Under the pieces are notes generated by a model. That model saw only the letters and a program-made list of their open reading frames with translations, was not told where the DNA came from and made no database searches. DNA of 64,000 bases from Styela clava (Eukaryota), in assembly GCF_964204865.1 (NCBI RefSeq), contig NC_135257.1, forward strand, positions 3,410,001 through 3,474,000, given 5' to 3'. This document shows, in pieces, positions 908 to 47,100 of this stretch. A program made the position numbers and the translations under genes. Within the stretch, counting starts at the first letter, position 1, and every line of letters starts with the position of its first letter.

Positions 908-1150
908 TCACATCGTCACGCTAATAACCAAATTGCGCAAGTCAATTTTGACGGTTTTGAGAAAAACAGAAAAAATGATATTTTTATGACATTGAGAGTC
1001 AATAATTTCCCATGGTTCAGTATTTTAGTCGTAGCTGGATTTAAATTAAATTGTATGACGTCGACATGTGACGTCATAATGACACACTGTGACTTACGCA
1101 GAAATGTGCCTATGAATTGGGGACATACGCAATTTTGCAACTTGACTATA
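908..1150. mobile_element. Probable terminal fragment of another DNA transposon (ends ...GCAACTTGACTATA), repeated in each unit
   Basis: Starts abruptly at the array junction, contains the near-palindrome ATGACGTCGACATGTGACGTCAT, and is followed by AT-rich sequence. Family not assignable from this window. Confidence 0.35.
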
Positions 1151-1744
1151 TTCATTAGTCCTTACTTTTAACACTTCTAATACAAGAGAAAAGATTATTT
1201 GGAAATCTATATATTATTAGATTCTTGAACCATTCGATTAGAAATCTTTACCCATGCTCCTGCCAAAACGATTCTCATATCACATTCATTTATTGAATTA
1301 TATTCCTTATTTACCAAAAATATACTAGGCACTGTAGAAAAGTTCTTATGTTCTATAGTCTATATATTTCATTGACTTGCGTCTAAAAATTTTATGAAAT
1401 GATGAAAATTGAGCAAATTAAAAAAATTCTAGGGACAGTCGAATATTTTATGATAATCGGATAATTACAACGACTGCCATATATTCAAATAGTTTTAATC
1501 TTCAGTCGGAAGCAAGACCATTCCACTGAGGGTCAATATCTCCCTCTCGCTGGAAATATTCACAGTACCGAAAAAGTTGTTAACAGCGCTGCGTGGTTTT
1601 CTCTGCGTGTTATTTGGAATGAGTTATCTTTCCGAAGATCATCACTAGCTTGCGCATGGTATTGAATCTTGCAAAGTTTATTCAGACAAATGAAATAGTT
1701 ATTTACTTCCTACTTGTATATATTTTTCGATTGCGTCTAAAATA

Positions 1745-1794
1745 ATCGCGACCGCACAATTCATCTCCGAAGGCCACAAGTTGTGCACCGCTAC
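1745..1794. mobile_element. Degenerate hAT-type MITE end (repeated in each unit)
   Basis: CGCGACCGCACA...GAAGGCCACAAGTTGTGCACCGCTA resembles the CGCGGGCCAC subterminal motifs and terminus of the element at 20281-20775. Confidence 0.35.
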
Positions 1795-4700
1795 TGTTAT
1801 CATATTACTTCTTAGTTAGGAGTTATATTTTTCACTGATTTATGTAACAAGAGGTAATTTCAAAGTTACGCGAATGCCGCCACATGTTGGTCACGTCATC
1901 ATTAATGAAAGTAGGAGGAATATTTGGTACATCTGTGTAATAAATGATTGTTACATAACAGATAATTGTATAATACTATATGCGGCATTAATTTTGAACC
2001 AAAATTAATTTTTGTGAGGTCCGCATTTATTGTAACGTTATATTCATTTTGCATATTAGTTATTAATATTTGATAAATTTCAGGTAGGAGGTAGAATTTA
2101 CATATTGATCCGGGAGTGACAAAAGTCGATAAGACGGCTTATGGCGAACCACGGCTTCTCGTCCGGATACCAGTTCATATCGGGTATGCGATTGTTTAGT
2201 CTGTTATTGTTTCAGATGCATAGACATAATTAGTGGGGGAAGCCGTAACCGACCAGCGCTTACGTAAAACCACTCTACGGCGTCGGGACCAGCAATCCTC
2301 TCGCACCTAATTACAAGTGCAGTTTTAAGTATTCTGTGGCGTCTGCAGCTGCCGCAAAACCATGGCGTTATTTCCATACCATGGCCGCTACGGCCAAACC
2401 TATGGCGACTGACTTTTTAGCTGCCGCAAACCAATGACGAGCTGCCGTTACCGCGGCAGTAAATTGAAAACCAATGGCAGGTGAAATTTTGCTGCCGTTA
2501 CCGCGGCAGGTGGGTCGTAAAGACAGGGCTGTCTCTTATGGTGACAAATATTGGGTAAGTTGGAACGATTTTCTTATGGATACAGTTTTGGTGGATTTGG
2601 GGTTAGGGTTTAAGTAGATATAATTCCGCATGATCAAATAAAATCTGGTACATTAATTGTGAATATATCGTTAATACTGATTACTGAATGGCGCAATAAA
2701 ACCATGGCAAGAGCTGCCGCGTCACATCGTCACGCTAATAACCAAATTGCGCAAGTCAATTTTGACGGTTTTGAGAAAAACAGAAAAAAATGATATTTTT
2801 ATGCCATTGAGAGTCAATAATTTCCCATGGTTCAGTATTTTAGTCGTAGCCGGATTTCAATTAAATTGTATAACGTCGACATGTGACGTCATAATGACAC
2901 ACTGTGACTTACGCAGAAATGTGCCTATGACTTGGGGACATACGCAATTTTGCAACTTGACTATATTCATTAGTCCTTACTTTTAACACTTCTAATACAA
3001 GAGAAAAGATTATTTGGAAATCTATATATTATTAGATTCTTGAACCACTCGATTAGAAATCTTTACCCATGCTCCTGCCAAAACGATTCTCATATCACAT
3101 TCATTTATTGAATTATATTCCTTATTTACCAAAAATATACTAGGCACTGTAGAAAAGTTCTTATGTTCTATAGTCTATATATTTCATTGACTTGCGTCTA
3201 AAAATTTTATGAAATGATGAAAATTGAGCAAATTAAAAAAATTCTAGGGACAGTCGAATATTTTATGATAATCGGATAATTACAACGACTGCCATATATT
3301 CAAATAGTTTTAATCTTCAGTCGGAAGCAAGACCATTCCACTGAGGGTCAATATCTCCCTCTCGCTGGAAATATTCACAGTACCGAAAAAGTTGTTAACA
3401 GCGCTGCGTGGTTTTCTCTGCGTGTTATTTGGAATGAGTTATCTTTCCGAAGATCATCACTAGCTTGCGCATGGTATTGAATCTTGCAAAGTTTATTCAG
3501 ACAAATGAAATAGTTATTTACTTCCTACTTGTATATATTTTTCGATTGCGTCTAAAATAATCGCGACCGCACAATTCATCTCCGAAGGCCACAAGTTGTG
3601 CACCGCTACTGTTATCATATTACTTCTTAGTTAGGAGTTATATTTTTCACTGATTTATGTAACAAGAGGTAATTTCAAAGTTACGCGAATGCCGCCACAT
3701 GTTGGTCACGTCATCATTAATGAAAGTAGGAGGAATATTTGGTACATCTGTGTAATAAATGATTGTTACATAACAGATAATTGTATAATACTATATGCGG
3801 CATTAATTTTGAACCAAAATTAATTTTTGTGAGGTCCGCATTTATTGTAACGTTATATTCATTTTGCATATTAGTTATTAATATTTGATAAATTTCAGGT
3901 AGGAGGTAGAATTTACATATTGATCCGGGAGTGACAAAAGTCGATAAGACGGCTTATGGCGAACCACGGCTTCTCGTCCGGATACCAGTTCATATCGGGT
4001 ATGCGATTGTTTAGTCTGTTATTGTTTCAGATGCATAGACATAATTAGTGGGGGAAGCCGTAACCGACCAGCGCTTACGTAAAACCACTCTACGGCGTCG
4101 GGACCAGCAATCCTCTCGCACCTAATTACAAGTGCAGTTTTAAGTATTCTGTGGCGTCTGCAGCTGCCGCAAAACCATGGCGTTATTTCCATACCATGGC
4201 CGCTACGGCCAAACCTATGGCGACTGACTTTTTAGCTGCCGCAAACCAATGACGAGCTGCCGTTACCGCGGCAGTAAATTGAAAACCAATGGCAGGTGAA
4301 ATTTTGCTGCCGTTACCGAGGCAGGTGGGTCGTAAAGACAGGGCTGTCTCTTATGGTGACAAATATTGGGTAAGTTGGAACGATTTTCTTATGGATACAG
4401 TTTTGGTGGATTTGGGGTTAGGGTTTAAGTAGATATAATTCCGCATGATCAAATAAAATCTGGTACATTAATTGTGAATATATCGTTAATACTGATTACT
4501 GAATGGCGCAATAAAACCATGGCAAGAGCTGCCGCGTCACATCGTCACGCTAATAACCAAATTGCGCAAGTCAATTTTGACGGTTTTGAGAAAAACAGAA
4601 AAAATGATATTTTTATGACATTGAGAGTCAATAATTTCCCATGGTTCAGTATTTTAGTCGTAGCTGGATTTAAATTAAATTGTATGACGTCGACATGTGA

Positions 4701-7700
4701 CGTCATAATGACACACTGTGACTTACGCAGAAATGTGCCTATGAATTGGGGACATACGCAATTTTGCAACTTGACTATATTCATTAGTCCTTACTTTTAA
4801 CACTTCTAATACAAGAGAAAAGATTATTTGGAAATCTATATATTATTAGATTCTTGAACCATTCGATTAGAAATCTTTACCCATGCTCCTGCCAAAACGA
4901 TTCTCATATCACATTCATTTATTGAATTATATTCCTTATTTACCAAAAATATACTAGGCACTGTAGAAAAGTTCTTATGTTCTATAGTCTATATATTTCA
5001 TTGACTTGCGTCTAAAAATTTTATGAAATGATGAAAATTGAGCAAATTAAAAAAATTCTAGGGACAGTCGAATATTTTATGATAATCGGATAATTACAAC
5101 GACTGCCATATATTCAAATAGTTTTAATCTTCAGTCGGAAGCAAGACCATTCCACTGAGGGTCAATATCTCCCTCTCGCTGGAAATATTCACAGTACCGA
5201 AAAAGTTGTTAACAGCGCTGCGTGGTTTTCTCTGCGTGTTATTTGGAATGAGTTATCTTTCCGAAGATCATCACTAGCTTGCGCATGGTATTGAATCTTG
5301 CAAAGTTTATTCAGACAAATGAAATAGTTATTTACTTCCTACTTGTATATATTTTTCGATTGCGTCTAAAATAATCGCGACCGCACAATTCATCTCCGAA
5401 GGCCACAAGTTGTGCACCGCTACTGTTATCATATTACTTCTTAGTTAGGAGTTATATTTTTCACTGATTTATGTAACAAGAGGTAATTTCAAAGTTACGC
5501 GAATGCCGCCACATGTTGGTCACGTCATCATTAATGAAAGTAGGAGGAATATTTGGTACATCTGTGTAATAAATGATTGTTACATAACAGATAATTGTAT
5601 AATACTATATGCGGCATTAATTTTGAACCAAAATTAATTTTTGTGAGGTCCGCATTTATTGTAACGTTATATTCATTTTGCATATTAGTTATTAATATTT
5701 GATAAATTTCAGGTAGGAGGTAGAATTTACATATTGATCCGGGAGTGACAAAAGTCGATAAGACGGCTTATGGCGAACCACGGCTTCTCGTCCGGATACC
5801 AGTTCATATCGGGTATGCGATTGTTTAGTCTGTTATTGTTTCAGATGCATAGACATAATTAGTGGGGGAAGCCGTAACCGACCAGCGCTTACGTAAAACC
5901 ACTCTACGGCGTCGGGACCAGCAATCCTCTCGCACCTAATTACAAGTGCAGTTTTAAGTATTCTGTGGCGTCTGCAGCTGCCGCAAAACCATGGCGTTAT
6001 TTCCATACCATGGCCGCTACGGCCAAACCTATGGCGACTGACTTTTTAGCTGCCGCAAACCAATGACGAGCTGCCGTTACCGCGGCAGTAAATTGAAAAC
6101 CAATGGCAGGTGAAATTTTGCTGCCGTTACCGCGGCAGGTGGGTCGTAAAGACAGGGCTGTCTCTTATGGTGACAAATATTGGGTAAGTTGGAACGATTT
6201 TCTTATGGATACAGTTTTGGTGGATTTGGGGTTAGGGTTTAAGTAGATATAATTCCGCATGATCAAATAAAATCTGGTACATTAATTGTGAATATATCGT
6301 TAATACTGATTACTGAATGGCGCAATAAAACCATGGCAAGAGCTGCCGCGTCACATCGTCACGCTAATAACCAAATTGCGCAAGTCAATTTTGACGGTTT
6401 TGAGAAAAACAGAAAAAATGATATTTTTATGACATTGAGAGTCAATAATTTCCCATGGTTCAGTATTTTAGTCGTAGCTGGATTTAAATTAAATTGTATG
6501 ACGTCGACATGTGACGTCATAATGACACACTGTGACTTACGCAGAAATGTGCCTATGAATTGGGGACATACGCAATTTTGCAACTTGACTATATTCATTA
6601 GTCCTTACTTTTAACACTTCTAATACAAGAGAAAAGATTATTTGGAAATCTATATATTATTAGATTCTTGAACCATTCGATTAGAAATCTTTACCCATGC
6701 TCCTGCCAAAACGATTTTCATATCACATTCATTTATTGAATTATATTCCTTATTTACCAAAAATCTACTAGGCACTGTAGAAAAGTTCTTATGTTCTATA
6801 GTCTATATATTTCATTGACTTGCGTCTAAAAATTTTATGAAATGATGAAAATTGAGCAAATTAAAAAAATTCTAGGGACAGTCGAATATTTTATGATAAT
6901 CGGATAATTACAACGACTGCCATATATTCAAATAGTTTTAATCTTCAGTCGGAAGCAAGACCATTCCACTGAGGGTCAATATCTCCCTCTCGCTGGAAAT
7001 ATTCACAGTACCGAAAAAGTTGTTAACAGCGCTGCGTGGTTTTCTCTGCGTGTTATTTGGAATGAGTTATCTTTCCGAAGATCATCACTAGCTCGCGCAT
7101 GGTATTGAATCTTGCAAAGTTTATTCAGACAAATGAAATAGTTATTTACTTCCTACTTGTATATATTTTTCGATTGCGTCTAAAATAATCGCGACCGCAC
7201 AATTCATCTCCGAAGGCCACAAGTTGTGCACCGCTACTGTTATCATATTACTTCTTAGTTAGGAGTTATATTTTTCACTGACTTATGTAACAATAGGTAA
7301 TTTCAAAGTTACGCGAATGCCGCCACATGTTGGTCACGTCATCATTAATGAAAAGTAGGAGGAATATTTGGTACATCTGTCTAATAAATGATTGTTACAT
7401 AACAGATAATTGTATAATACTATATGCGGCATTAATTTTGAACCCAAATTAATTTTTGTGAGGTCCGCATTTATTGTAACGTTATATTCATTTTGCATAT
7501 TAGTTATTAATATTTGATAAATTTCAGGTAGGAGGTAGAATTTACATATTGATCCGGGAGAGACAAAAGTCGATAAGACAACTTATGGCGAACCATGGCT
7601 TCTCGTCCGGATACCAGTCCATGTCGGGTATGCAATTATTTAGTCTGTTTTTGTTTCAGATGCATAGACTAAATAGTGGGGGAAGCCGTAACCGACCAGC

Positions 7701-8924: not shown

Positions 8925-9193
8925 AACTAGAGAACCCCATGATACCGCGAAACAAGCCAGTCTTGGAAAATACTCGAAAGATAGTGAAACAGGTAAAGTG
9001 GCAGCGAGAGCTCAGAAAGAAGGCACCAGCGACAAGCCCCTCATTTTATGGTGGTGTCTCACGACGCGCGATATTTCAACATAAGCAAATATGACAATGA
9101 ACGAAAGCTGGGTATATTTGAACGTCGTTTGTTTTGTAACTCTTATTTTGATGTAGAATCAACATAGAGACAAAACATTTTAAAAAATACAGT

Positions 9194-9199
9194 TTTATT
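9194..9199 (-). terminator. Candidate polyadenylation signal (AATAAA) of the pseudo-caspase gene
   Basis: TTTATT on plus, ~170 nt downstream of the TAA stop at 9366-9368 on the minus strand. Confidence 0.4.
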
Positions 9200-9365
9200 G
9201 ATGAAACTAAAACTCTAGCTGTAATCTATACGAGTATATATATATATATATATCTTTTTATAGAGAGCTATATACACATAAATCTAGTTTAAACGTTAAA
9301 CATAGAAGCTATGCTATACAGAGTGGTAAGGAAAAATTTGTCCACATTAGCAGAATCATATACAA

Positions 9366-10331
9366 TTATAATCCGGGCATCAGATACACTTTTTTCTTCA
9401 GAGAGTGATCAATAAATATATCAACTTCTGTTTCCTCTACCTCTGGTTTTGCTTGTGTCGGTGACATTCTTGTTTTGGGTGCCATAGCAACCTCTTCTTT
9501 CACATATTCCAGAACACTGAGAAAATCTTTGTAACTTGCCTGTTCCATAATCGTGCTAATTAAAACTTGAACATGCCAGGGTAACTTATCCCGATTTGGT
9601 GTTGCAGTTCCTCCGAACGTTGGAGCCGCCTTCGCTCCTCCACCATGCTGATGCATTATACGGACTAACAGTATATCATCGCCGTATTCGGACACATCAA
9701 TCGGCTCGGGCTGGAATGAATCTTGAGACGAATCTTCCGAATTGAAAGAGGAGAAACGATTGTTTGTCTTCCTTTTATTCTTTTGTGTATGTTGGTCTAT
9801 TATTGGCGGACTGGGATCGTGCTCAGTTACGCGAAGCATGAAAATAAATACCTTCGGCTTTTCCACCAGTGCCGGGCATCCGGAATGACTGAAATATTTC
9901 AAGTAAGATGTAGTCGAAATTCTTGCTTTTGTGTCTTCCGTACCGAGTAATCGACCATATTCATCGGATTGAGAAGATACGAGCACGAATAACGAATTGA
10001 GGTTGCAAGCGAATGTGTGATACTGATCAGACATAGCCGCCATATTGCGATGCATGGCATCGTTACTCAATTGGAAACGTGACATAATGTAAAACCCGAG
10101 TTGGGCATAAAGAGACGTCAAGCATTTTACCACAGTATTCGCCCGTTCTGACGTTGCTTCAAGTTGATCGACAGGTCTGGTAGAAGACAAGGGAGAAAAG
10201 TCTTGCGCGAGAGTAATTGATCTGGGCGAAACAGGTGAGTATTTTTCATCATCATTATTGATGATCATTGCTACCCCCTTCGGTTGGGACATCTGGTATG
10301 CATCTTCGGTTAAAGCTTTATCGGCAGAAAC
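9366..10331 (-). CDS. Terminal exon encoding the entire caspase-like p20+p10 domain (pseudo-enzyme)
   Basis: Acceptor TTTACAG|GTT at 10331, in frame with the 308-aa ORF. The SHG motif position reads VSSQS and the QACxG position reads FMLRV. Confidence 0.85.
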   Translation of the reverse strand, partial: VSADKALTEDAYQMSQPKGVAMIINNDDEKYSPVSPRSITLAQDFSPLSSTRPVDQLEATSERANTVVKCLTSLYAQLGFYIMSRFQLSNDAMHRNMAAMSDQYHTFACNLNSLFVLVSSQSDEYGRLLGTEDTKARISTTSYLKYFSHSGCPALVEKPKVFIFMLRVTEHDPSPPIIDQHTQKNKRKTNNRFSSFNSEDSSQDSFQPEPIDVSEYGDDILLVRIMHQHGGGAKAAPTFGGTATPNRDKLPWHVQVLISTIMEQASYKDFLSVLEYVKEEVAMAPKTRMSPTQAKPEVEETEVDIFIDHSLKKKVYLMPGL

Positions 10332-13300
10332 CTGTAAAGATTCGCAAAAACAATTTGATTGGAATAATCATGGAGGCTAAAATTGTTTTGATTCACTTGT
10401 ACGTACTGACTAGAAATACTAAATACGCACTTCTGTTGCGGAATTAAATTATTGAGTCAATTGCAATATGGATTGGATAGGCAGCCTCATTATAATGATA
10501 ATGGTGACGTTTGGCTTTGTCAGTCAGAATAATAGCAATGTCTCAGACTATTTGTAACGCAATTTGCCTCTTTGGGATGTTGCACGTCGTTTTTAACAAT
10601 CATGTGTACAGGTAGATTCAGTATATTTGCTCGGCATACATCCAAAGATTTCTACTCAAAGAGTTAGTCATACTACTAACAGCGGCACAAGCATTAAGTA
10701 ACAACTAACGCAAGACTTACCCTATTTGGCTTTACAGCATTTGTCGAAAGTTGGTCGAAAATGTTTATTCGCCACTGGCTTGGCAATAAAGTCGTCGACA
10801 ATCTTTTCACATATTCGTACTCTCGATTCAGTCGTTCAAATTCATGATCCAGTTGCATCACCTATGTAATGTAATTTGAGATTTTATGTTGAAATAAAGT
10901 ATATATAAAAGAATGCAATGGAGAAAAATCTTCAATGGAGGTTACCAGTTTTCTTGCATTATAATAGGAATCTTTTTCATCCTCTTTCTGTTTCTCTAAA
11001 TCCAACGCAGCCTTTCGAAACTTTATCAACTTGTTTTTCAAATCTTGTATCACTCCAAGTTCCTGCTCAAAACCTCCTCGTAACCACATTTCTTCTTTTA
11101 AGTCAAGTCGTTTTTTGTGTTCCTGTTATTATCAAGAAATAAGTTTCACACTTTCGATATATTTGCACAAAGATTTCATTCATATATATGTTACAATGAG
11201 CCGCAGCGATTGTCTAAATTTCACAATACAGTTAAAATAGGAAAACCCTCACTTCTAGCCTGGCAACTTCTGCTAATATAGTGTTTAGTTCCCTCAATTT
11301 TTCTTCTCTCTTCCTCATATTGAACTCAAGCTTTTCTTTGCGTTTATGCTGAACCATCTTCTTGTATGTATCAGTTTTTTCATGAAGACTGTTTTCGAAA
11401 AAAGGGTATGATTGGAAAAAATTTTTTAAACTTTATCTGTTGTGTACTTTTAAAAATAAAACTTATCTCTTTTAAAACTAATATATGACGCAACAAAACA
11501 GCATTATTTTGTTCCATTCGTCATTTTCCTATGATGATCGAAAACATGTTTTCTATTTTGTTAATTAATAAGTTTGTCACATACCAATGTAACGTATAAA
11601 AATGGTATGATATCAGATATATATATAAACATATCAATATTTCATTTCAAAATACTGAGGCAGAATAAAACTTTTGTATCCTTACTATTTGATTGTCGTG
11701 TCCAGTGATTTGATCTCTAATTTCTTCTCGTCGGCGCCATCGGATAATTCTTCTATCTTGTCGGTACATGTGTTATAAACTTCCCGAAATTCTGTTGAAG
11801 CTAATGAAATTTCTCTTTCTCTGAGTTCGCGTTCTACTTCAGTTATATCGTATTTGCTGATTCTGTATTTTAAGGAAAAACACATTATTGCATATTGATT
11901 GAACAATATCAGAAAATTGTGAGATTCTGCAAGTAAATGTATGAATTAAATCAATTACGTTTTGAGCTACTTTTTGTGTAGTACTCAATTACTTTCTATT
12001 CGTTTGTATCTCTCTGGTAAAATGAAATAGATTTCTAATATTTCCTCACAAACTGTTTTATAGAATCTTCGAAAGTAGCATAATACAGCCATCTATTGAA
12101 AAAGTTAGTTCAATAGGATTTACGCTGGGAGCAATGGGATAATATTTCTGTTTAGGATAGGATTTACATATTTATTCCTGGGAAAGCCGATAATACGACC
12201 TAATTATATGGCGAACCACGGTCTCTCGTCCGGTTATCAGTCTATGTCGGGGATGGTATTGGTTAGCCAGGTATGTGTTTTCAGATGCACGGGCTTGATG
12301 GTGGAGGAAGCCGTAATGAATAGAAATTAACTACCATATAGTAGTATTTTGTCAGTAGCTCATATTAACAAATATGAACATTTACCTGATACGACTTTCC
12401 AAATTCTTAATCGTTTCCTTTTTCTCATCGAGTTGTAGAACGGATGGTAGTTGAGAACGACGTTCCTCAACACTCGAGAATTTACCAGCGAACCTAATTA
12501 AGTGATTAAATAATATTGTCCATATGAATGTATAATGACGTGTATATATGACTCAACATTGACACAGATTAAAAATTAAGAAAATTCATAAAAAATAATT
12601 GATTTAATGCAACTGAATAAGCTACAAAGGACACCATCGCCGACATACCTGGCATGCATTCTCCATACTGTGGACAAATCTGTCATCTGGCAAAGTGTGT
12701 CGTGCACTTGTCGCAAAATCGATATCACGGGAAATTTATTTTCCACCTCCGTATGGTTAGGACTGTCCAGTACAACCTCGTTATTATCACTTAGCAGTCT
12801 TGCACACAAATCCTGAATACATGAAATTGGCGGTATATACGGTATATTGGATTAATCTAGAAACGTATGCGTTCATCATCATATAACGTTTGATAACCAT
12901 CGTTTCCTTTGTTTTAGTTTTGTAGCATACCTGAAGCTCTAACATTTTGTCTTTTGTTTTATTGACTTCATCGTGTTCAATGTCGTAATTTTCCAATAGA
13001 AAATATATGATATATTCTCCAAATCTCGCAAGCAACGTCCCATAAAAGTCGACCTTGTTCAGAAAAGTTTTCAATCCTCTTGTCGCAGCATTCTCCGGTT
13101 TTGCTTCCGGTGCATGGTTTGTGTCGATATTTCTCTATGATGATGATATCATACCATGAAAATAGTATATTGAAGTAAAATTGTAAGCACAAGTGGATTG
13201 GAACATTCTAACAGCTTGGGAGTTTAGACATAAACTTCAAATAACGCAGTGGGATTTCGAAAAATGCATCACTCTTGGTGTCGCAGCACGGTGTCTCGAA

Positions 13301-14425
13301 AATGTCGTGTCCAAATGTCCCACTTGCGTCCCAAGTAAAAATAGTTCGCAGACAACTATTTTATCCCGTCAGTTACTTACGATCCAGATGATAATTTGGC
13401 TAAATATTATCGGAATATCAGTATCAAAATACCGGCAATATCGGCTTTTTGAAATATCGGCGTGTCGATATCAGTACAGATATCGACGATAAAAGCGATA
13501 TCGGTATAGCTTAATGCATGTATCAAATGTTTGAATAGTTATTACACTACTTTAATTTAATCAGGTATAGTTCATCTATAGCCTACGTCAATTTTCACAA
13601 CCTTTGGACAAGTGGGACACGTAGAACAAGTTGGACACGTGAGACACGACATTTTTAGACACCCGCGTCGCAGTAGGTATTATATAGCCAAGTCATGTAA
13701 GGCTTCCTTGAGGCCATTTACAAACATTTTCCACTGAAATTTAACCAGTAAGTCGTATACGCGAAACACAGAAGTTCTACACTTCTGCCGTTGGTTAACA
13801 TTCTAATATCTCGGTAAAACGTCTTATAAAAGGATGATATCACTGGTATGTTAGTCGTTGGATTAACAGATATTAGATTTCTTTCTGGGCAACAAGTGGC
13901 GAATCTTTCTGTACCCGAAAAAGTCTTCTTAACTCTGAAGTCACATCCATATTTCGTTACGTCAAGACTGATATTAGCGAACATGAACCTAGCGTTAGGT
14001 GCCCTATTTTCCAGTTTCTGTACACCACACCGTAAAATCTGCGTTGAGAATGGTGATAATTCCTATACGTAGCATAATTATTTAAAGTGCCACCGTAGGA
14101 TACAAATGTAAGGAGAGAGCACAATTTGTTATCCTACCTTGGTTTCCCAGGCAAACCATTGCCTGATTTGACGAATACTGTCACAAGTTTTATAATCTAG
14201 GAAATACTGTCTTCTTCGCTGAGATATAGCAGTTATTGAACGTCCAACTTCTTCTAGTGCATGCAGACTAACTTTTGTTTTTTCTCTGGTAAGTGTGTGA
14301 CGGTACATGTGCTCTTGTGCTTGAAGTCGAAGATCTATATCGCTGTTTTCATGTGTCACCTCCTTTGTTGTCATTTTGTTTCTTTTGAATTCTGATCCCT
14401 GGAATTTATGAGAATGTAGACGCAT
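9366..14425 (-). CDS. Multi-exon gene: coiled-coil protein with a C-terminal, catalytically inactive caspase (peptidase C14A)-like domain, roughly 820-910 aa
   Basis: Phase-consistent GT-AG exons (minus): 14425-14138, 14062-(donor unresolved, ~13960 to ~13720), 13134-12931, 12812-12649, 12493-12386, [12013-11993 possible micro-exon], 11862-11686, 11388-11253, 11122-10946, 10861-10721, 10331-9366. Middle exons are E/K/R-rich and heptad-like. The last exon has caspase landmarks YQMSQPKGVAMIINN, LGF, CPALVEKPKVFI, PWHVQVL and SLKKKVYLMP. Confidence 0.8.
12154..12316 (-). mobile_element. SINE-like fragment in an intron of the pseudo-caspase gene
   Basis: Homologous to 267-435; the minus strand ends GTAAATCCTATCCT. 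Confidence 0.7.
13289..13666. mobile_element. MITE with ~23-bp TIRs and ~9-bp TSD (Mutator-like), containing an ATCGG-rich nested fragment (~13405-13510)
   Basis: CGGTGTCTCGAAAATGTCGTGTC ... GACACGACATTTTTAGACACCCG. Flanks are GTCGCAGCA (13280-13288) and GTCGCAGTA (13667-13675). GGACA subrepeats are present. Confidence 0.75.
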
Positions 14426-17400
14426 TCAATGTTGTTTTCAAACAAACAATTACAAGATTGCTAATTTCTCTTAGAATAGACAATATTATCACCCAGACTT
14501 TCAAATTACAGCGCAGCGAAAATTTGGATTCATTCGTGGGTTTCCCGAATTTTCACTGAACATATTTTGAGGGCGCGAATTACAAAGTGCTCCTGTGAAA
14601 AGGCAAAAGTCGTAATTTTTGAAACCTCTGGTAATAACACGTTTTTATATGAGCCAGCTTGTCGTTGAGCATTTTCTATTTGAAAATAACGAGAATACTC
14701 ACCAACATAGAATTCTCTCCGTCTTCTTGATATAAATTGCTTTGGGTGTCCATCTGGTTCATCACAATAATCGGAGCATTTGGTCAACACAGAATGATTT
14801 TATTACAGAATAAAGTTTGTACCGAATTAACACATCAGTGGTTGGTATGTTCGCAGATTTTTTAAACCTTTTGTGTTGCATCCCCTTGAAATCATTCAAT
14901 TATTTAAATGGTCATTTACAAATAACTGTACACTCGCCACCAGTGTGCTCGATAACTACTTCATATATAATATCAGGAAAACTGTATTTGATATAAAACA
15001 GTTTAAACGAATACGATGAAAAGCTATATCTATCGGTATTTTGTAGTATATATATCAGGCTACGCTAGCCGGTGCTCGATAATATGAAGCCCCGATGCTC
15101 AGATCAACCTTGCATTAAAATATTCCTATATTAGGCATACCTGGAGTTGCATTATAAGATTGATACAATCTATGCTACGATTTTTCGTTACAACCTTGTA
15201 ACTGACCTGAAAAGCTATATGCTGTCCTTATTATTTAATACTTTGCTTTTAAAATCAGTGATCATATTTATACCAGTGATAAATATGTTTATTTTTTGAA
15301 AATACCGTATATATCATACTGACATATTTTACAAAAAAAAAAAACATTTTTACTGCCTTATCACAAGCTATCTAGATACTACCGAAAAGGTTGACCAAGC
15401 ATTATGAAGCCCACAATCAAATCAAGTTAGTACACAAATATTCCAATATTGAAAATGATAAAGTAAATTTATGAACTGAAACACTCTTATTACGATGGTG
15501 TTGACACAATTAAAGTGCGTGTGGGTAAAGCAACATCACGCTGTAGTTAAACTTATGGAATATAACCAAACTTTTACAGTTAATTAACATGATAACGTTA
15601 CAAAAATCAATTATCAATGATCGACTATGTTGTATAAAGTAAATATATTTCTGAATTTGAAGCATTGCCGACCACCGATGCGTTCAAAAGATTTTATTTA
15701 CGCAAAGTCTAGTAAACTGTGCGAATACAACAATATTCAACTTGTTTATACAACATCTGGTAAATAAACCAAACACCGTTGCCTTTCGGATCAAAGACTT
15801 TCAAACAAGTCAAGGAAGCAGCGGAGTCTGGCAATGAATTTGAGTTTGATATGGCAGCCTATAGTGACTACGGAAGAATGCATAGGAGTTGCCTTTGATT
15901 ACACTCTCTATTTTTGACCAAAACCCTACCAACAAGTCATAAACAAGTTTTGCATCAAGCGTCGTTTCACTATTTTCAAAATCTAAATATGATGGTATGA
16001 CACTGGTTTAAATCATTGAACATTTGATATATATATTATATATAAATTTGTGGAAGAGCATGGTGTTACAGTGTATGTTCAAAACGGTTTTATTTCAAAC
16101 TAACCTAAATTATATAAGATAATAATCTTGCGCCAAGTAAGTGCTTGACTTGATGCATTTCCTTTTGGTAAAATAACGTTACTGACATGCTGGATATGGC
16201 CTAATATGTCAAGAGCCCTCTGTTCGCCACTCATTGCTATATGATATTATGTTTTATATAATAAATAATATGTTATAATGATATCTACTCCACATTCTTG
16301 CATGCTAGGGAATTACATACCTACTTGAAACGGAATTAGAAAAATCTAATTACACTTAATTAATCATACCAAAATTTGTAATAAAACTATATAACACAGA
16401 GATAAATGAACTCTGTCGCTGCAACAGGGCTCAGTAATTTCTAATCTGTCAAGCAATAACACTCATTGTAACTAACAGTCTGGTATAGGCATCGCAAATT
16501 TTATTTGAGATAAATATCAATAGCACCGTTTTACTTCCATTTCCAGGTTTAAAATAATATAATACACCAATAATTGAACAACCTATATATAATAAGAAAA
16601 ACTACTGATTTGAATTGCTTTCATGGAAGCTATGCTAAAAAATAAATACAATTCTAGCTTTGTTCTTCTTATTCTCTCATACCTTTTGCTTAATTTTTGT
16701 TGAATCAAAACCGTTTGTAATTACTTGCCTTCACTGGCCATTTTTCTGGTATCATTTTTGACGGGATGATGCCAATATACAACGTAGTCGTATTAGTGAA
16801 ACGTATTGCTTCTTGTCCGTCTACTATTCTTACGCTATTATACGTATCTACACCTTTATTATGTTTTGGCTGATATAGAATTACGTTTTCGTGAATGTAA
16901 AAATGTTCTTTGGTCGATCTTCTATTGTTTGCGGAAACCGAATTAATTCTAGTATTGTGATCAAATTTTATTAAAGTTAGGATACGCCGGATGAACGACT
17001 TTTGGAATTGTACTCTTTGTGAAATTATATAGGCCTACAAGGTTTTTCAGAGGAGTATCACAACGAATCTTCATTTTCGAATAAATTCCTATTCGTGTTG
17101 TGTTTGTTAGTTGAATGCAGCTAATAAATGTGGTTCATACTTTATGCCAAATAAAAAATAAATTGGCGAATTGGTGGCTATAAGCTGGGGTAACGCGAGA
17201 CTAATTATATATCCTTCCTTATGCCTTCTTTATGCAATTCTGAGTTTTTGATCGTTGGTATAAAAATATATAATATGAATTTGCAAAAATTACAATTCAA
17301 AATTTGGCCAATTACAGTTGAATATCATCGGTAAGTCAATCTTCAGACTATGGATCTAGCTTTATCCGGTAGGTGTCGCTAGTAAACAGATTTCTAGGTA

Positions 17401-29165: not shown

Positions 29166-32100
29166 ATGATGGTTGCAGTTAGTGGCCATCTTATGGCAAA
29201 TTCAACAGGGTCTTCCCTAGTGAAAGCAACTTCCTCATTGGATTCACCTCCACCAAACAGCCCCGAGGCTCGTTTTTCACGTTCTGACCAGCAGGAATAC
29301 AACGGTGTGCCGCAGTTAACTGGATCCCCAAACCCCCAGAGTAGCGAGAGTTCATCCGAGAAATCACCCAGTTTGGATCATCAACATCAAGAAAAAATTT
29401 CACATCTGCATGCCGGTGCATTCTGCCAAGAAGAATATTTCAAAAAGAAACAACAATTTGTTCGCCCATTTTTATCTGACAGCGAGGCCGACGAATCTGA
29501 ACAAAAATGCGGAGGAGTGAACCCCAGAAATTTCATGTCGGAAAACCGTCAATTTTGCGATGGTTCTGAAATAGTAGATGGTATGGATTACGCCGGCTCT
29601 TCTGAAAAGAAAAGAAAATTCTCGGACGGGAAAGAATATTTTGACAACGTAGAAGAAAATTATAGTTCAACGAAGCATCGGAATTTTAGACGGAGCGACC
29701 AGGAAGGTATGAATACATAAAATTTCATTACATATATGGGAAATAGGCCTTTCCAGTATTTAATGCTTTATTTATTGCTTAGTATATATTTTCTACAATG
29801 AATGAACTTTTTTTTTCAAATATGCCTTCTCGTATTAATATCGCCTTGTGAGTTCAGTTTAAAGTAAAATTACGAATCACTTTAAAAATATTGAAATCTT
29901 ACAATACTTTATGTGCATAGAACAAACGACCTGCTTTAATATTTATTTTCCCATTATTCTCGTTTTAACAAAGGACACAATAGTAACATTCCTTTGTCGC
30001 AATATGTTCGAGCGGAAAATATTCTTTCGCTTTGGGAGCATCGTTTCAATCGATTTTTATTTCGACGCATAAATTCAATATTTAACTTCCTATTAGAGCT
30101 CAATGAATTGTTTTGTGATCAACCCTGCGCGTCCAATAATGCTCGCAGCATTCAGCAGATTGGCTATTATATGGATGTGCAAGTCAATTTCCTTTGCTAG
30201 GAATAGCATGCGGAATATTTTCTAGTATTTTGAAATAATGAATGATGTTTTTATGTATCATAAATATGCTGCTGTTACCATTTGCCATCCTAACACCACC
30301 AATATAGACTGTTCGGTGTATATTCAAAAGAATCGATTTTTTCCGAATTTCGAAACGCAAACAAAATATTTGACACATCCGTAAATCGACTCGGTTTTAA
30401 TTTATAAATGTCCATTTGATTCAAATTGCTTCGATGTATTGATTTAATATTCTTATGGTACAACTTGATATACAGTACAAGAAATTGTCAAACGCTGTTG
30501 TAATTGAGAATTCATCGTAAACAGACAAATGTTTTATAGCATGAAAAAGGTTATGCACGCGTGTGTGATGACTATATTCGGGGTGAAGTTTATGCCAGCT
30601 AATTTTAATTTTACGCGTTTGGTTTATGGCCTTAACGTCGTTATTATGGCTTACACCAGTGACAAATTTAGCGCAAATACGGCTGTCACGTAATGCGGCA
30701 AATAGCAATATCCAACATAATAAAATGTCTTGTGTGAACAACGGTTCCTGCTCCGTCCTTATTGCATTGTGCTATTGTTGGAAATTGTTGAACCAGTTTC
30801 ACGTATACCCTGCTTATGTCTTGCTGCACTATCATAGATTTTTATTTCCTGTTCAAAAGTATCGTTTGCGTAGCCATTTTCGACAATGAATGTACGAAAA
30901 CGTATCTTTTGATAGTGTTAGACCAGAGGAAAATAGTCAAGCAAAATTGTACTCTCTTCACGTTTGCTTATTTACCTCCCAAACATTCTGTATTCTGTGT
31001 ATTTTTAATTTGGGATGCAGATTTTTTTGTATTTCAACATTGGTTTTCGCCCAGTAATTGTTTGAATTTCAATCAATTATAATGAACTATAATATAACTA
31101 CCACAATCCAATTAGTAATTTATGCAATATTCTTACGAATGAGGTATTCGCTACATTACCTAATACTTCCTATTGTTATTACTCTCGAATCATTTAAACT
31201 AATAGGATTTAATTTTTTTAATCCTCACGAAGGCACACGACAAATAACTTATAAATCGGAGATATACACCGTGCTACTGTATTAAATGAATTTAAGACAA
31301 TGCCATTATCGCGAATCTTTTTCGTCATCTTGTTTGCAGATATCGGAGACCGACTCTCTGACTGCATATAGAGAGTGAAATGTACGGAAACGTTAATAAT
31401 ATTTTGCTCACCAGAGACCAGTATATATATATGAAGATTTACCATATCTGCTTTTTGATATTGGCAGAATGCTCTCCTGAAAATAACGACCTAGGGAAGA
31501 ATGAGGCCAACAATCAACTTCAGGACCTGAGGACAAATGGCCAGGGCGAGAGAAGGTTGTCATCGCCAACAATGAAAGAAGTCACACATCTCCATTCTCC
31601 AAACATCTATACACGTCGGTCAAGTGATGACAAGTCCGACGAAATGGATTCCACTAATGCGAAGTAAATGCTCTTTTGTTATTTTATAGATTTTCAATAT
31701 TGTTTTGGTCATTTTACTTAAAGTATCGATTTTACCGTCGAAAACAATATTGGCTTTACTTACTTACTTCGTATTTTTGTCTTACTTCCTCCGACCGCCA
31801 TTTTGTCTTTACTGTATCTAAACTGTCAGAGGACTAAAATAGATTTCTTGCTTGAAGCCAAAATTTATCGAACGATCATCGACGACGTGACAACTTGGCG
31901 AACGTTGTGAATAATCTGAGGCAAAGAAATGGCGCAACTGAAGAAAACCCGACAGAAAGACACTGCCACCAACATATCGACAAGGCAATGATACACCAGG
32001 ATACTACCAACTGCGAATATTCTTCAAAATCTAACGATATGATATTTCAGACACGACGGATTTCAAGTGGAGGTGAGTGGCAAACTATGAATACACATAT

Positions 32101-44100: not shown

Positions 44101-47100
44101 TAGAGTTTTAGATTTTATTATGGAAAATCATTTTTTGAAAAAAAAAAGTTTAAGAGTTCATCGATAAATATTTTAACACGAAGATATTATAGCAGCTTAT
44201 GTACGTTAGGAAAACGGAAATCTCTGATAATATCGCTTGATGCGTGAAACAGGTTTTTCGTTATATTTGTGCGTACGTCGCTATATTTCAATTTCAATAC
44301 CTCACATTGTTTTTATTTATTTAATTTTTTTTATATATAAAATTAGACGTAAGTTGTTATTTTTGACGTTATTATTAATCTTTTCCTCGCTTTTTGTAAC
44401 AGATCCATACGCTCATATGCTGGCGTCCGGCTTCGGGTTAAATCCAAACCAGGTAGGTTTGTGTACATTGTTCAAATCACTGTTCTACTTTCTTCATTGC
44501 GTCAGCAATTTATCAAAGAACGCCTTGTTCGATTTAGGTATTCGTTAGATAAATATGTTTTAAATTAATACGTGCGTATTTACGTTCGGTTATATAATTT
44601 TAAATAACTTTTTGTGGTTCCGAAATATTTATATTTTGGTGTTTTTAACTATTTACACAAATCCGACTAAATTCACACAATCCGATCGTTGTTTTGTGGA
44701 TCAAAAATATCGGAATATCATTTATGGCTGTGTTTTTCTTTTACTAGCGTCGTTTTCGCGTGTAATATGTCTGTAAACCATTGCTTGGTATTTCTAAAAA
44801 AGTAATTGACTGGCTGTCCTCAAAGTGATCGACTTTTGTTTATGAGTAAAACTGAAGACTAATTCCCTTCGCTAAATTTCGGATAGATTGTATTGTAGCT
44901 ATGAAATAAAATGGAGGCACCAACGTACATTTACTATCTGGCATCATTTATGGTATTGATCGTTTTTTTTTTATTTGTTTCAGCACCCGCTTATGCTTCC
45001 GCAGACTACAGCTTCCGGACTTTCTACAATTAATTTACATTCTGGTTTGCAGACTCCACAATTGGACAAATCGAGATTAGGTAACTTTGCATTTTTCATT
45101 TCAAAATAACTAATATACACACTTATATCATGAAAGAAGTGACATTTTCATGCGTTATTCGTAACATTTCAGGATTGACTGTTCCGACAACTTTAACAAA
45201 ACCGACTTCCATTTCATCGTATTCTGATCTAAGCCGTGGAAAAACGTCATCTTCAATCAGACGAGATGCTGGCTATTCTGTTCCGCACGGCGTAAAACGC
45301 CGCTCAACAGATTCATCCGTTAACGATGTTCGAGCTTGTAAATTGCCTTCAACTCGTCACGAAAATCTTAGCTCACTTCCAGTGACGATGTCGCCAGCTC
45401 ATTCACGTTATTCTCCTGTTCTGAGTTCCCAACACGATGGAAGCCCAAATCACCGCGCAGCAGTTTCCGACGACCACATCAGGAAACGTGGCCTTCTTTT
45501 TGACCGACATCAACGACGAGCGAGTCAAACATCCCCCAACACTGACCGGTATCTATCAAGCCCAGAAGCACGAAGCGACGCTAACCTATCTCCCAAATTT
45601 CTGGCAAAAGGGGTGAGTTATGTTACCAAGTTTTGTGATAATCTGAATAAATAAAACATAGAGAATATTGTACACAATGCCGGCAAAAATGTATCACCAA
45701 GTTAGACCACCCACAAATATATTTGTTGATTTATTCAGCAAGGCATACAAGATCGGCGGTGGCAGTTGAGATTGAACTTTTTTTAGTTTCATTGCTATCC
45801 TGTTAACGATTACGGACTAGTCGCTTGACACTATTTTCGGTTGTACGCTTTGTCAAGCAATTACGGCCAACTTACGGTCTTTGACGGATGGCCTAATATC
45901 TTGCATTGTCTCATAAACACAGTGAAGACTCGCTTAATATCATTTTGGCATGCTCTATAGTGCATCACAGAACGTACGGCCGGAAATCACATTTACACTG
46001 TTAGTATCAACCCTCGGTAGGCCGGGATCATGACTAAAGAAAGGTATCGTTGAATTATCTGACTATAATACATCGGAATGCATTTCGCGCTTGTTCCAAG
46101 TTCACCACTTGGCAATATTACGCCCGTCGTTTACGTCATAATGCTCTCTTTCAAGTCCGTCGCCTCCTACCGACGTTCCCGTGGGACACGTCACGGCACA
46201 CCTTTGAGAGGAAGACCCGCTCACGGGAGGCTTAAAATAGCGAACCTTCACCACAATATTATCAAGGAACGCCTGCAAGCCAGGCGCACAATCGTTGATT
46301 TCAATGGAGAATACGATTATCATCCATATATATCGCGATGATTGTTTCCAACACAACAACTGGCATAACCAATAAGATTAACCAATTCGCGCTGGTCGTT
46401 GTATTTAAACTTGACGGTGGCGACAGGGTTAGGATTAAGGCGTGTGTCAGATCACAAATAAGCCGATTTGAGTAACGTTTTGCGAGATGATAAGACTTTA
46501 AATATTCTTGCAAATGAAGCCGCAGTTTGGAAATGACAGCTTCCGTTCGTACTAACTAAAATGGCTACTAAATTGGAATATTTTCTCGTAGCCAATATGG
46601 TGGATAATCGCTGATCACATTTTATATATTGAAGTATGAATCGTTCACAACTGAACTCGGTTGGGACACTGTATAAAGTCATCCAGGCTTAGAAATTGAC
46701 CATCGCGGCTATTAGATGCGATGCAATGCGATTTACGGTAATAAAATTTATGACAATACAAAAACAAGTTAATCAATTTTGGTAAATAATAGCTTTATCG
46801 ACCTTAAGAATTTTTAATTTCATTTGTTCGAATCCTTGGCGAGTAAACGAGTGTTTGTTCATTGGTAATGCTATAAGCTTGCATTTCACTCAATGGCCTC
46901 TTTTCACACGGACGCCGACATCTCTTGTGCTGTATACTTATGGTGTCGGATTTAATATTCTTAGAAATATTTCGTCTGTCGTCGACGACAATAGGAAACA
47001 ATAGTTCAATATTGTAACATATTGTTGTCAAAATGACAAGAACAACCATGTACGTTTACTTGTTTCATTGTTATTCCTTGCTACCATATCATTTTGCGCA

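What the first reader, a model, noticed from the sequence alone, without database searches (positions are those of the whole stretch)
9366..14425. Coiled-coil pseudo-caspase: caspase fold with both catalytic residues lost and no death-fold prodomain
Seen: clear caspase landmarks (Y-x-M..KGVAMIINN, LGF, CPALVEKPKVFI, p10 W-x-VQ-x-L and SLKKKVYL). The His motif (SHG) reads SSQS and the Cys motif (QACxG) reads MLRVT. Upstream exons encode ~500+ aa including a long E/K/R-rich coiled-coil stretch, with no CARD or DED recognisable by eye. The reading frame and nearly all splice phases are intact, which argues against a decayed pseudogene. Established: inactive caspase homologues such as c-FLIP regulate active caspases by heterodimerisation, but carry DEDs. 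Inference: a lineage-specific decoy or scaffold that tethers a caspase-binding module to a coiled-coil structure. I do not recognise this architecture.
Basis: partly seen in the sequence, partly recalled or inferred. Interest (0 to 1): 0.8.

Follow-up and report, generated by a model that had tools for sequence, protein, structure and literature searches.

The report
Coiled-coil pseudo-caspase gene, conserved in ascidians
This is a real, expressed gene for a protein with a helical head, a long coiled-coil middle and a caspase-shaped tail that has lost its cutting residues; it belongs to an uncharacterised family found in sea squirts and amphioxus.

Summary
On the minus strand, ten exons (window 9350-14983) encode about 797 aa. 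Spliced RNA-like contigs from 4 runs in 2 studies join all ten exons through canonical GT..AG introns. The last exon is a caspase domain: Pfam Peptidase_C14 E 2.5e-7, and the AlphaFold model matches CED-3 at Z 22.4 and c-FLIP(L) at Z 22.2. Gln replaces the catalytic His, and the QACxG cysteine motif is absent.

Two corrections: the ATG at 14425 and the ORF at 13721-14062 are intronic. The likely start is 14762.

The gene is not species-specific. The same architecture occurs in Clavelina lepadiformis, in an ascidian-like metagenome contig, as a Ciona savignyi fragment, and in Branchiostoma. All named entries are "uncharacterized". All 7 ascidian sequences lack both catalytic residues; one amphioxus paralogue keeps them.

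Selection is purifying: 11 synonymous against 3 non-synonymous variants, pN/pS about 0.07. No death-fold domain was detected.

A role as a non-catalytic scaffold or caspase regulator is inferred, not shown.

The parts
14703..14983 (-). Exon 1: 5' UTR plus the first 20 codons. The likely start ATG is at 14762-14760, with an in-frame stop upstream at 14784-14786.
   Evidence: RNA contigs reach 14921-14983 and join 14703 to 14398 in 3 of 4 runs. In the fourth run, the loose ends carry the partner exon's letters.
14138..14398 (-). Exon 2 (87 codons, phase 0/0): the first part of the conserved N-terminal helical domain. This is the most conserved exon.
   Evidence: Joints. Identity is 63% to Clavelina P0022 and 75% to L002. 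It is single-copy in the genome.
12931..13134 (-). Exon 3 (68 codons): N-terminal helical domain.
   Evidence: The joint 13134 to 14138 skips 1003 bases in 4 of 4 runs. Identity to P0022 is 49%.
12649..12812 (-). Exon 4 (54 codons plus 2 bases): end of the N-terminal helical domain.
   Evidence: Joints. Identity is 46% to P0022 and 58% to L002. It is single-copy in the genome.
12386..12493 (-). Exon 5 (1 base + 35 codons + 2 bases): start of the charged helical or coiled-coil region.
   Evidence: Joints, seen in 3 of 4 runs on its upstream side. The E/K/R/D/Q fraction is 0.43.
11686..11862 (-). Exon 6 (1 base + 58 codons + 2 bases): coiled-coil region.
   Evidence: Joints in 4 of 4 runs. Heptad contrast z is 3.6.
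11253..11388 (-). Exon 7 (1 base + 45 codons): coiled-coil region.
   Evidence: Joints in 4 of 4 runs. The E/K/R/D/Q fraction is 0.51, but heptad z is -0.5.
10946..11122 (-). Exon 8 (59 codons): coiled-coil region.
   Evidence: Joints in 4 of 4 runs. Heptad z is 2.7. Identity to P0022 is 41%.
10721..10861 (-). Exon 9 (47 codons): end of the coiled coil and the linker.
   Evidence: Joints in 4 of 4 runs. Heptad z is 2.0.
9350..10331 (-). Exon 10: 321 codons (10331-9369), the stop at 9366-9368 and the start of the 3' UTR. It holds the whole caspase-like domain in one exon.
   Evidence: The AlphaFold model is and the fold matches.
9435..10130 (-). The stretch matched by Pfam Peptidase_C14 (profile positions 26-216 of 233).
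   Evidence: One search gives E 2.5e-7 and 31.1 bits. The same stretch was found in the whole-genome scan.
9969..9971 (-). The Gln codon (CAA) at the position of the catalytic His (S-H-G reads S-Q-S).
   Evidence: Alignment to zebrafish caspase-3. The family alignment reads Q/R/R/N/Q/L/Q in the 7 ascidian rows and H in amphioxus P0028.
9828..9839 (-). M-L-R-V, at the place of the QACxG cysteine motif. No Cys is present.
   Evidence: HMMER puts Leu opposite Cys. MAFFT treats the Q-T-C of amphioxus as absent. Either way, 7 of 7 ascidian rows lack the Cys.
9618..9632 (-). P-T-F-G-G (residues 237-241 of exon 10). It is invariant in 7 of 7 ascidian members and lies where caspase-3 has the substrate-loop stretch ending in S-W-R.
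   Evidence: for the invariance.

Best explanation
A functional, single-copy gene encodes a protein of about 797 aa in what is probably an ascidian. The protein has three parts.
1. An N-terminal all-helical domain of about 230 aa. This is the most conserved part, and no known family matches it.
2. About 250 aa of charged long helices (coiled coil).
3. A C-terminal domain with a true caspase (C14A) fold that cannot cut. The catalytic His is Gln, the QACxG cysteine motif is gone, and the Gln and Arg that hold the substrate's aspartate are replaced.

Shown here: the gene structure, its splicing into one mRNA, the fold, the loss of the dyad, purifying selection, and membership of an uncharacterised chordate family. 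The amphioxus paralogue in that family still has His and Cys.

Inferred: the protein works without catalysis, as a scaffold. The dead caspase domain keeps the core sheet and the conserved last strand and C-terminal motif, and would serve as a pairing surface for itself or for one of the many active caspases in this genome. The coiled coil would oligomerise or space the molecule, and the N-terminal domain would bind an unknown partner or place.

My odds: a functional non-catalytic protein, about 0.9. That it regulates caspase activation in the manner of c-FLIP, about 0.3.
For: - Splicing: two RNA-like contigs (2545 and 2569 nt) each cover all ten exons. Of the 9 introns, 7 are seen in 4 of 4 runs and 2 in 3 of 4 runs, all with CT..AC ends on the + strand. 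All acceptors are AG, all donors are GT and the phases fit.
- Caspase domain: Pfam Peptidase_C14 scores above its cut-off. The fold matches CED-3 at Z 22.4, c-FLIP(L) at Z 22.2 (rmsd 2.5 over 202 of 208 residues) and caspase-9 at Z 22.0. MALT1 scores 16.5 and a metacaspase 14.6.
- Dyad: absent in 7 of 7 ascidian sequences. The only invariant Cys is the structural one of the R-C-P motif, and there is no invariant His.
- Selection within the species: of 14 coding variants among the RNA contigs, 11 are synonymous and 3 are not, over 498 synonymous and 1884 non-synonymous sites. That gives pN/pS of about 0.07.
- Selection between species: against the L002 orthologue, summed pS is 0.85 (saturated) and pN is 0.38, with 0 stops in the 9 exon blocks.
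- Family: exons 2-10 are collinear with Clavelina P0022 and amphioxus P0028. The non-caspase 430 aa of P0022 match P0028 at 28.6% identity over 427 aa, 186 bits. L002 has the same nine blocks.
- Possible partners: the genome holds 54 Peptidase_C14 matches, 30 of them near-complete domains in one open frame. This gene is single-copy.
Against: - No experiment or model here shows binding to any caspase, or any oligomeric state.
- The AlphaFold models rest on shallow alignments of 13 and 12 rows. I could not read their coordinates, so residue positions come from sequence alignments only.
- The N-terminal domain is more conserved than the caspase-like domain (75% against 36% identity to L002). The main function may therefore lie there and have nothing to do with caspases.
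- The substrate groove is thoroughly remodelled.
- The runs' tissue and stage are coded, so there is no expression context.
- Three other runs of the same species label hold next to none of the stretch's words.
- The runs are only guessed to be RNA. The spliced form and the single genomic copy argue for cDNA but do not prove it.
Confidence: 0.6

Rival explanations
1. It is a structural or trafficking coiled-coil protein, for example cytoskeleton- or cilium-associated. Its work would be done by the N-terminal domain and the rod. The dead caspase domain would be only a generic binding or stabilising module with no link to caspase control.
For: The N-terminal exons are the most conserved part: 63-80% identity among ascidians against 36-45% for the caspase-like domain. 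The substrate pocket and the dyad are all gone. Residues 12-188 of the Clavelina model align to a chain of the bovine sperm doublet microtubule (8otz_0A) at Z 11.5, rmsd 2.7 over 143 of 156 residues, 17% identity. The rod matches SMC, Rad50 and prefoldin coiled coils at Z 10-12.
Against: Z 11.5 is below the level of about 13 that the tool gives as common for helical models. Neither N-terminal exon tested has a significant sequence match in the PDB: 0 hits for exon 2, and a best E of 0.68 among 4 hits for exon 3. The caspase-like domain is still kept under constraint, with invariant motifs such as P-T-F-G-G and the C-terminal strand in 7 of 7 ascidians.
Confidence: 0.25
2. It is still a protease that uses a non-canonical nucleophile or dyad.
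For: The fold is intact. Exon 10 contains His and Cys residues, for example H171 just after the lost Cys motif and C152. The amphioxus paralogue P0028 keeps His and Cys.
Against: Only C152 is invariant in the 7 ascidian rows, and it is the non-catalytic Cys of the R-C-P motif shared with active caspases. No His is invariant, and H171 is R or K in the other 6 rows. The Gln of QACxG and the S-W-R stretch are also replaced.
Confidence: 0.03
3. It is a decaying pseudogene, or an artefact of reading separate genes as one.
For: The catalytic residues are lost. It scores 28.6 bits and ranks 48th of the 54 Peptidase_C14 matches in its genome. One contig of run X9, at depth 4.9, has a 1-base insertion after 14277.
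Against: The frame of about 797 codons is open, with 9 canonical introns. Single contigs span all exons in two runs. pN/pS is about 0.07. The same exon order is open in L002 and annotated as one protein in Clavelina and amphioxus. The insertion is absent from the other 3 runs.
Confidence: 0.02

Closest known systems
Uncharacterised chordate proteins of the same family: Clavelina lepadiformis LOC143465426 (XP_076819815.1, 742 aa), Branchiostoma floridae LOC118404675 (XP_035659813.1, 761 aa), B. belcheri LOC109476238 and LOC109476237, and the Ciona savignyi fragment H2Y485.
   Same: They share the order of N-terminal helical domain, coiled coil and C-terminal caspase domain, collinear with window exons 2-10. 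Clavelina also lacks His and Cys.
   Different: B. floridae LOC118404675 keeps the His (M-A-H-G-D) and the Cys (I-Q-T-C-M-E). Its neighbour LOC109476237 lacks the Cys. None has a described function. UniProt names them only as 'Caspase family p20 domain-containing protein'.
c-FLIP(L) (CFLAR), called the only human pseudo-caspase in the abstract of PMC7586951, as shown in the search listing.
   Same: It has a caspase fold without catalytic Cys or His. Its protease-like domain (3h13) is among the best structural matches, at Z 22.2, rmsd 2.5 over 202 of 208 residues. It is known to act by pairing with caspase-8 (passages read in PMC11121540).
   Different: c-FLIP has two N-terminal DEDs and no coiled coil. 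No DED is detected here. Sequence identity in the structural alignment is 17%. Nothing indicates orthology, so the loss of catalysis is independent.
Invertebrate inactive caspase homologues: Aedes aegypti CASPS18 (a decoy that enhances CASPS19) and C. elegans CSP-3/CSP-2 (which inhibit CED-3 autoactivation). Both are recalled from memory and were not seen in any call.
   Same: They are caspase-like proteins without activity that modulate an active paralogue.
   Different: As I recall them, they are short proteins with no long N-terminal domain or coiled coil. No comparison was run here.
Initiator caspases with death-fold prodomains (caspase-9, caspase-2/CED-3/Dronc, caspase-8).
   Same: They have a long N-terminal region ahead of a caspase domain. 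CED-3, caspase-9 and Dronc are top structural matches, at Z 22.4, 22.0 and 19.2.
   Different: No CARD or DED is detected by Pfam at E up to 10 in three full-length family members. The first 120 residues of the Clavelina model hold only four helices of 18-34 residues, unlike a six-helix death fold of about 90 aa (the size is recalled). The protein is catalytically dead.
'Ci-caspase X' of Ciona (PMC10923776, passages read): a divergent caspase placed with caspase-2 and having no recognisable CARD.
   Same: It is an ascidian caspase-family member with an unidentifiable prodomain.
   Different: Whether it is the Ciona orthologue of this gene is unknown. The main-text passages I read give no sequence, accession, length or catalytic-site information, and I did not open the supplements.

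Membership tests
Peptidase_C14 (caspase domain, Pfam PF00656) | Profile score above Pfam's gathering cut-off | tested here: met
   31.1 bits against a cut-off of 21.4, E 2.5e-7, over residues 69-300 of the exon-10 piece. The same place was found in the genome scan.
Caspases proper (C14A) as a fold | The caspase alpha/beta fold, closer to caspases than to paracaspases, metacaspases or legumains | tested here: met
   Z is 19.2-22.4 for CED-3, c-FLIP(L), caspase-9, -4, -8 and Dronc. MALT1 scores 16.5, a metacaspase 14.6 and legumain 13.4. Foldseek gives E 7e-13.
Active caspases | Catalytic His (S-H-G) | tested here: not met
   Gln in the window and Q/R/R/N/Q/L/Q across the 7 ascidian rows.
Active caspases | Catalytic Cys in Q-A-C-x-G | tested here: not met
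   The window reads F-M-L-R-V-T, and no Cys is present in 7 of 7 ascidian rows.
Active caspases | Residues of the aspartate pocket: the Gln of QACxG and the Arg of the S-W-R loop (the roles of these residues are recalled) | tested here: not met
   The Gln is absent and the S-W-R stretch is replaced by the family-specific P-T-F-G-G. The N-terminal Arg could not be placed because it falls in a low-confidence insert, residues 30-63.
c-FLIP (CFLAR) family | Tandem death effector domains ahead of the pseudo-caspase domain | tested here: not met
   No DED in the Pfam scans of the 10 exon pieces or of P0005, P0007, P0022, P0028 and P0029.
Death-fold (CARD/DED/PYD/DD) initiator caspases | A death-fold prodomain | tested here: inconclusive
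   Pfam finds none, even at E up to 10. The predicted helices are too long and too few.
The unnamed chordate family (LOC118404675 / LOC143465426) | Collinear homology over the N-terminal domain, the coiled coil and the caspase domain | tested here: met
   Window exons 2-10 align in order to P0022 and P0028. The N-terminal 430 aa of P0022 match P0028 at 186 bits. L002 has the same nine blocks.

The most novel reading that the evidence does not exclude
This would be an old chordate 'coiled-coil caspase' whose self-association is built into the polypeptide instead of being supplied by death-fold adaptors. In ascidians it would have been turned into a pseudo-enzyme that serves as a death-fold-independent platform for switching the expanded active caspases on or off. 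Passages read in PMC10959488 report that ascidians have lost caspase-9 and Apaf-1, so this platform could fill part of the gap left by the lost apoptosome.
Probability: 0.12. Interest if true: 0.8.

Novelty: new variant of a known kind. Interest (0 to 1): 0.58.

Why it matters
Pseudo-caspases are few, and the well-studied one, c-FLIP, is a key switch between cell survival and death. This one arose independently and is conserved across ascidians. It carries a prodomain type (helical domain plus coiled coil) that I did not find described for any caspase.

It also has a relative in amphioxus that still keeps the catalytic pair, which makes a natural before-and-after pair for studying how an enzyme becomes a pseudo-enzyme. 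Ascidians such as Ciona are tractable by CRISPR and have caspase-dependent metamorphosis, so the function can be tested directly.

If it proves to control caspases without death-fold domains, it would show a second way to assemble caspase complexes. If it does not, it shows a caspase fold reused for an unrelated job. As it stands, it is a well-supported uncharacterised family, not a new principle.

Tried and rejected
- Relatives by word-indexed search. The caspase exon alone found only two fragments of about 300 aa, because of the length limit. The whole amphioxus protein, and its residues 30-260, found only itself. These blanks say little about vertebrates or other phyla.
- ESM Atlas with the amphioxus N-terminal part gave no usable hit.
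- Pfam on the 10 exon pieces gave only sub-threshold chance hits: DUF7663 at 16.6 bits, EzrA and MdcG. I rejected them because the full-length relatives do not repeat them.
- Rfam on the whole window found nothing.
- PDB sequence search with exons 2 and 3 gave nothing significant.
- dN/dS between species could not be computed, because synonymous sites are saturated at pS 0.85. I report pN against pS and the within-species variants instead.
- Placing the family within named caspase subfamilies failed. The profile search ranks caspase-3 first (E 7.5e-21), then caspase-8 and -7. The amphioxus protein ranks caspase-3, then caspase-9. I had no named reference sequences, so I built no tree.
- Paracaspase and metacaspase membership was rejected on lower Z scores.
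- Literature. Seven searches turned up no paper describing a caspase with a coiled-coil prodomain. Searching six identifiers of the family's database entries returned 0 papers. I read passages, not whole texts, of PMC10923776, PMC11121540, PMC10959488 and PMC3196919. Their supplements, which list caspase accessions, were not opened and may include members of this family.
- Earlier notes of the scan: nothing near this place. The one unrelated note on 'caspase' elsewhere in the genome was not used.

Full report
**What is there.** The finding lies on the minus strand. Pfam places a Peptidase_C14 caspase domain on it at 31.1 bits, above the 21.4 cut-off, E 2.5e-7. A sequence search of the PDB gives only weak caspase hits; the best is zebrafish caspase-3 at E 0.0079. 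The alignment puts S-Q-S opposite S-H-G and M-L-R-V opposite A-C-R-G.

**Gene structure and expression.** Five runs of the same species label, guessed to be RNA, hold 0.32-0.38 of the stretch's sampled words. Four DNA-like runs hold 0.87-0.91.

I laid four of the RNA-like runs, from two studies, on window 9150-15140. This gave nine joints with CT..AC ends, which is GT..AG on the minus strand. Seven appear in 4 of 4 runs and two in 3 of 4. Two contigs (2545 and 2569 nt) each cover all ten exons. Intron depth is zero apart from repeats.

The exons are 14703-14983, 14138-14398, 12931-13134, 12649-12812, 12386-12493, 11686-11862, 11253-11388, 10946-11122, 10721-10861 and 9350-10331. Every acceptor is AG, every donor is GT, and the three split codons read Arg, Arg and Tyr.

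The ATG at 14425 and the 114-aa ORF at 13721-14062 are intronic. The likely start is ATG 14762, after an in-frame stop at 14784-14786. That gives about 797 aa: 476 upstream plus 321 in the last exon.

The caspase exon and two N-terminal exons are single-copy in the 377-Mb assembly. The intron-less contigs are therefore best read as cDNA, although the runs' RNA label is only a guess.

**Fold and active site.** I modelled exon 10 with AlphaFold on a 13-row alignment. Mean pLDDT is 68.6 and pTM 0.72, with low-confidence loops at residues 30-63, 179-203, 231-248 and 289-298.
- Foldseek returns caspases at E 7e-13 and below.
- VIA-align gives CED-3 Z 22.4, c-FLIP(L) 22.2 (rmsd 2.5, 202 of 208 aligned), caspase-9 22.0, caspase-4 21.8, MALT1 16.5, a metacaspase 14.6 and legumain 13.4.

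So this is a true caspase fold.

In the family alignment, the His position reads Q/R/R/N/Q/L/Q in the 7 ascidian rows, and the cysteine motif is absent in all 7. The only invariant Cys is that of the R-C-P motif, which active caspases also carry away from the active site. No His is invariant. The loop where caspase-3 has S-W-R reads P-T-F-G-G, invariant in 7 of 7 ascidians. I could not read model coordinates, so an alternative dyad is excluded by conservation, not by geometry.

**The upstream part.** Pfam finds nothing above cut-off in any upstream exon or in full-length relatives. At E up to 10 there is still no CARD, DED, Death or PYD domain.

I modelled the Clavelina orthologue on a 12-row alignment; mean pLDDT is 77.8. 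It has six helices in residues 3-212 at pLDDT mostly 80-95, then helices 216-252, 255-297 and 303-423, then the caspase fold.
- The rod matches SMC, Rad50, prefoldin and IpaB coiled coils at Z 10-12.
- Residues 12-188 match one chain of the bovine sperm doublet microtubule at Z 11.5.

Both are below the level the tool calls common for helical models, and the tool warns that the N-terminal part was barely tested.

In the window, exons 5-8 are 43-53% E/K/R/D/Q. Exons 6, 8 and 9 show heptad contrast above shuffles, while exons 5 and 7 do not. 'Coiled coil' is therefore reasonable but not proven, and whether it pairs within or between molecules is unknown.

**Relatives.** A phmmer search of 1.84 billion representatives with exon 10 gave 18 proteins at E up to 0.001 and 5 at E up to 1e-30. 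Cluster look-up names Clavelina lepadiformis, Ciona savignyi (a fragment) and several Branchiostoma species. All are 'uncharacterized'.
- Window exons 2-10 align in order to Clavelina P0022 and B. floridae P0028. Identity to P0022 is 63% for exon 2, 49% for exon 3, 46% for exon 4 and 36% for exon 10.
- The non-caspase 430 aa of P0022 match P0028 at 28.6% identity over 427 aa, 186 bits. None of the other, weaker caspase hits shares this region.
- JGI metagenome contigs that carry P0003 (L002-L004) show the same nine exon blocks, all open.
- P0028 keeps His and Cys. Its neighbour P0029 lacks the Cys.

The family therefore predates the split between ascidians and amphioxus, and the ascidian branch is uniformly dyad-less. 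That the window's organism is an ascidian is my inference from these relatives; no tool named it.

**Selection.** Seventeen variant rows were listed among the RNA contigs. Three are non-coding. Of the 14 coding variants, 11 are synonymous and 3 are not, over 498 synonymous and 1884 non-synonymous sites, which gives pN/pS of about 0.07. Against L002, summed pS is 0.85 (saturated) and pN is 0.38. Exon 2 has pN 0.16. This is purifying selection, strongest on the N-terminal domain.

**Mechanism.** Shown: the protein is made from one mRNA, keeps a caspase fold, cannot use the canonical dyad or aspartate pocket, and is conserved. Inferred: it acts by binding.

The genome offers many possible partners. 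There are 54 Peptidase_C14 matches, 30 of them near-complete domains in one open frame, clustered on contigs C6 and C1. Passages in PMC10959488 report that urochordates lack caspase-9 and Apaf-1, which makes an alternative platform conceivable.

Against a caspase-centred role, the N-terminal domain is the best-conserved part and the substrate groove is remodelled. I put about 0.3 on a c-FLIP-like regulator, about 0.25 on an unrelated structural role, and the rest on scaffold functions I cannot specify. Residual protease activity or pseudogene status get a few percent each.

**What is known.** c-FLIP(L) is the closest analogue in mechanism and structure, but it has DEDs and is not a member of this family. 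I read passages of the amphioxus caspase survey (PMC3196919). It counts 45 caspases, 7 of them of unknown type, and never uses the word 'coiled'. The Ciona survey (PMC10923776) names a divergent 'caspase X' without a CARD. I could not test whether that is this family.

No paper in the searchable library mentions any of the six family identifiers I searched. The supplements of these papers were not opened and may list family members.

**Verdict.** This is a new variant of a known kind: a pseudo-caspase with an undescribed helical-plus-coiled-coil N-terminal region, in a family that databases already hold without a name.

Noticed in passing
window 12153-12316 (intron 5 of the gene): A SINE-like repeat of about 165 bases. 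The genome search found 2945 first-look candidates; 40 were scored, and the other 39 copies are 82-86% identical. Summed contig depth there is 944-5676 in the four RNA-like runs, with many loose ends and odd joints. Rfam finds no family there.
   Followed up: partly
window 14981-14992 (5' end of exon 1): One contig of run X7 carries 9 letters beyond 14983 that differ from the genome, just upstream of an AG (table 7). This would fit a trans-spliced leader, as known in tunicates (recalled). Nine letters in one contig are too few to say.
   Followed up: no
window 13350-13549 (intron 2): Depth is 336 in run X6 only, with a loose end at 13460 in X5 and X6. The DNA there has short repeated motifs. 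It is probably another repeat.
   Followed up: no
One 227-nt contig of depth 2.4 in X5 lies there unspliced. Pfam finds nothing in the ORF.
   Followed up: partly
G000 contigs C6 18.78-20.09 Mb, C1 24.24-24.28 and 28.9-29.27 Mb, C17 2.82-3.04 Mb: A large expansion of caspase genes whose whole caspase domain lies in one open frame. Thirty near-complete domains appear among the 54 matches, many in tandem clusters.
   Followed up: no
L002-L004 (JGI metagenome contigs of about 22.6-23.1 kb): Three 'metagenome' contigs carry an identical multi-exon animal gene, the orthologue holding P0003. They are therefore host (ascidian-like) DNA inside metagenome data.
   Followed up: partly
P0033 (B. belcheri KAI8506017.1, 1483 aa): This gene model appears to fuse the two neighbouring amphioxus paralogues. 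A P0029-like part comes first and a P0007-like part starts at about residue 745.
   Followed up: no
window 29166-29720 (+) and 45130-45654 (+): Two serine-rich open frames of 184 and 174 aa are the only other long ORFs with an ATG start in the window besides the caspase exon and a 120-aa one at 57566-57928. They may be exons of neighbouring genes.
   Followed up: no
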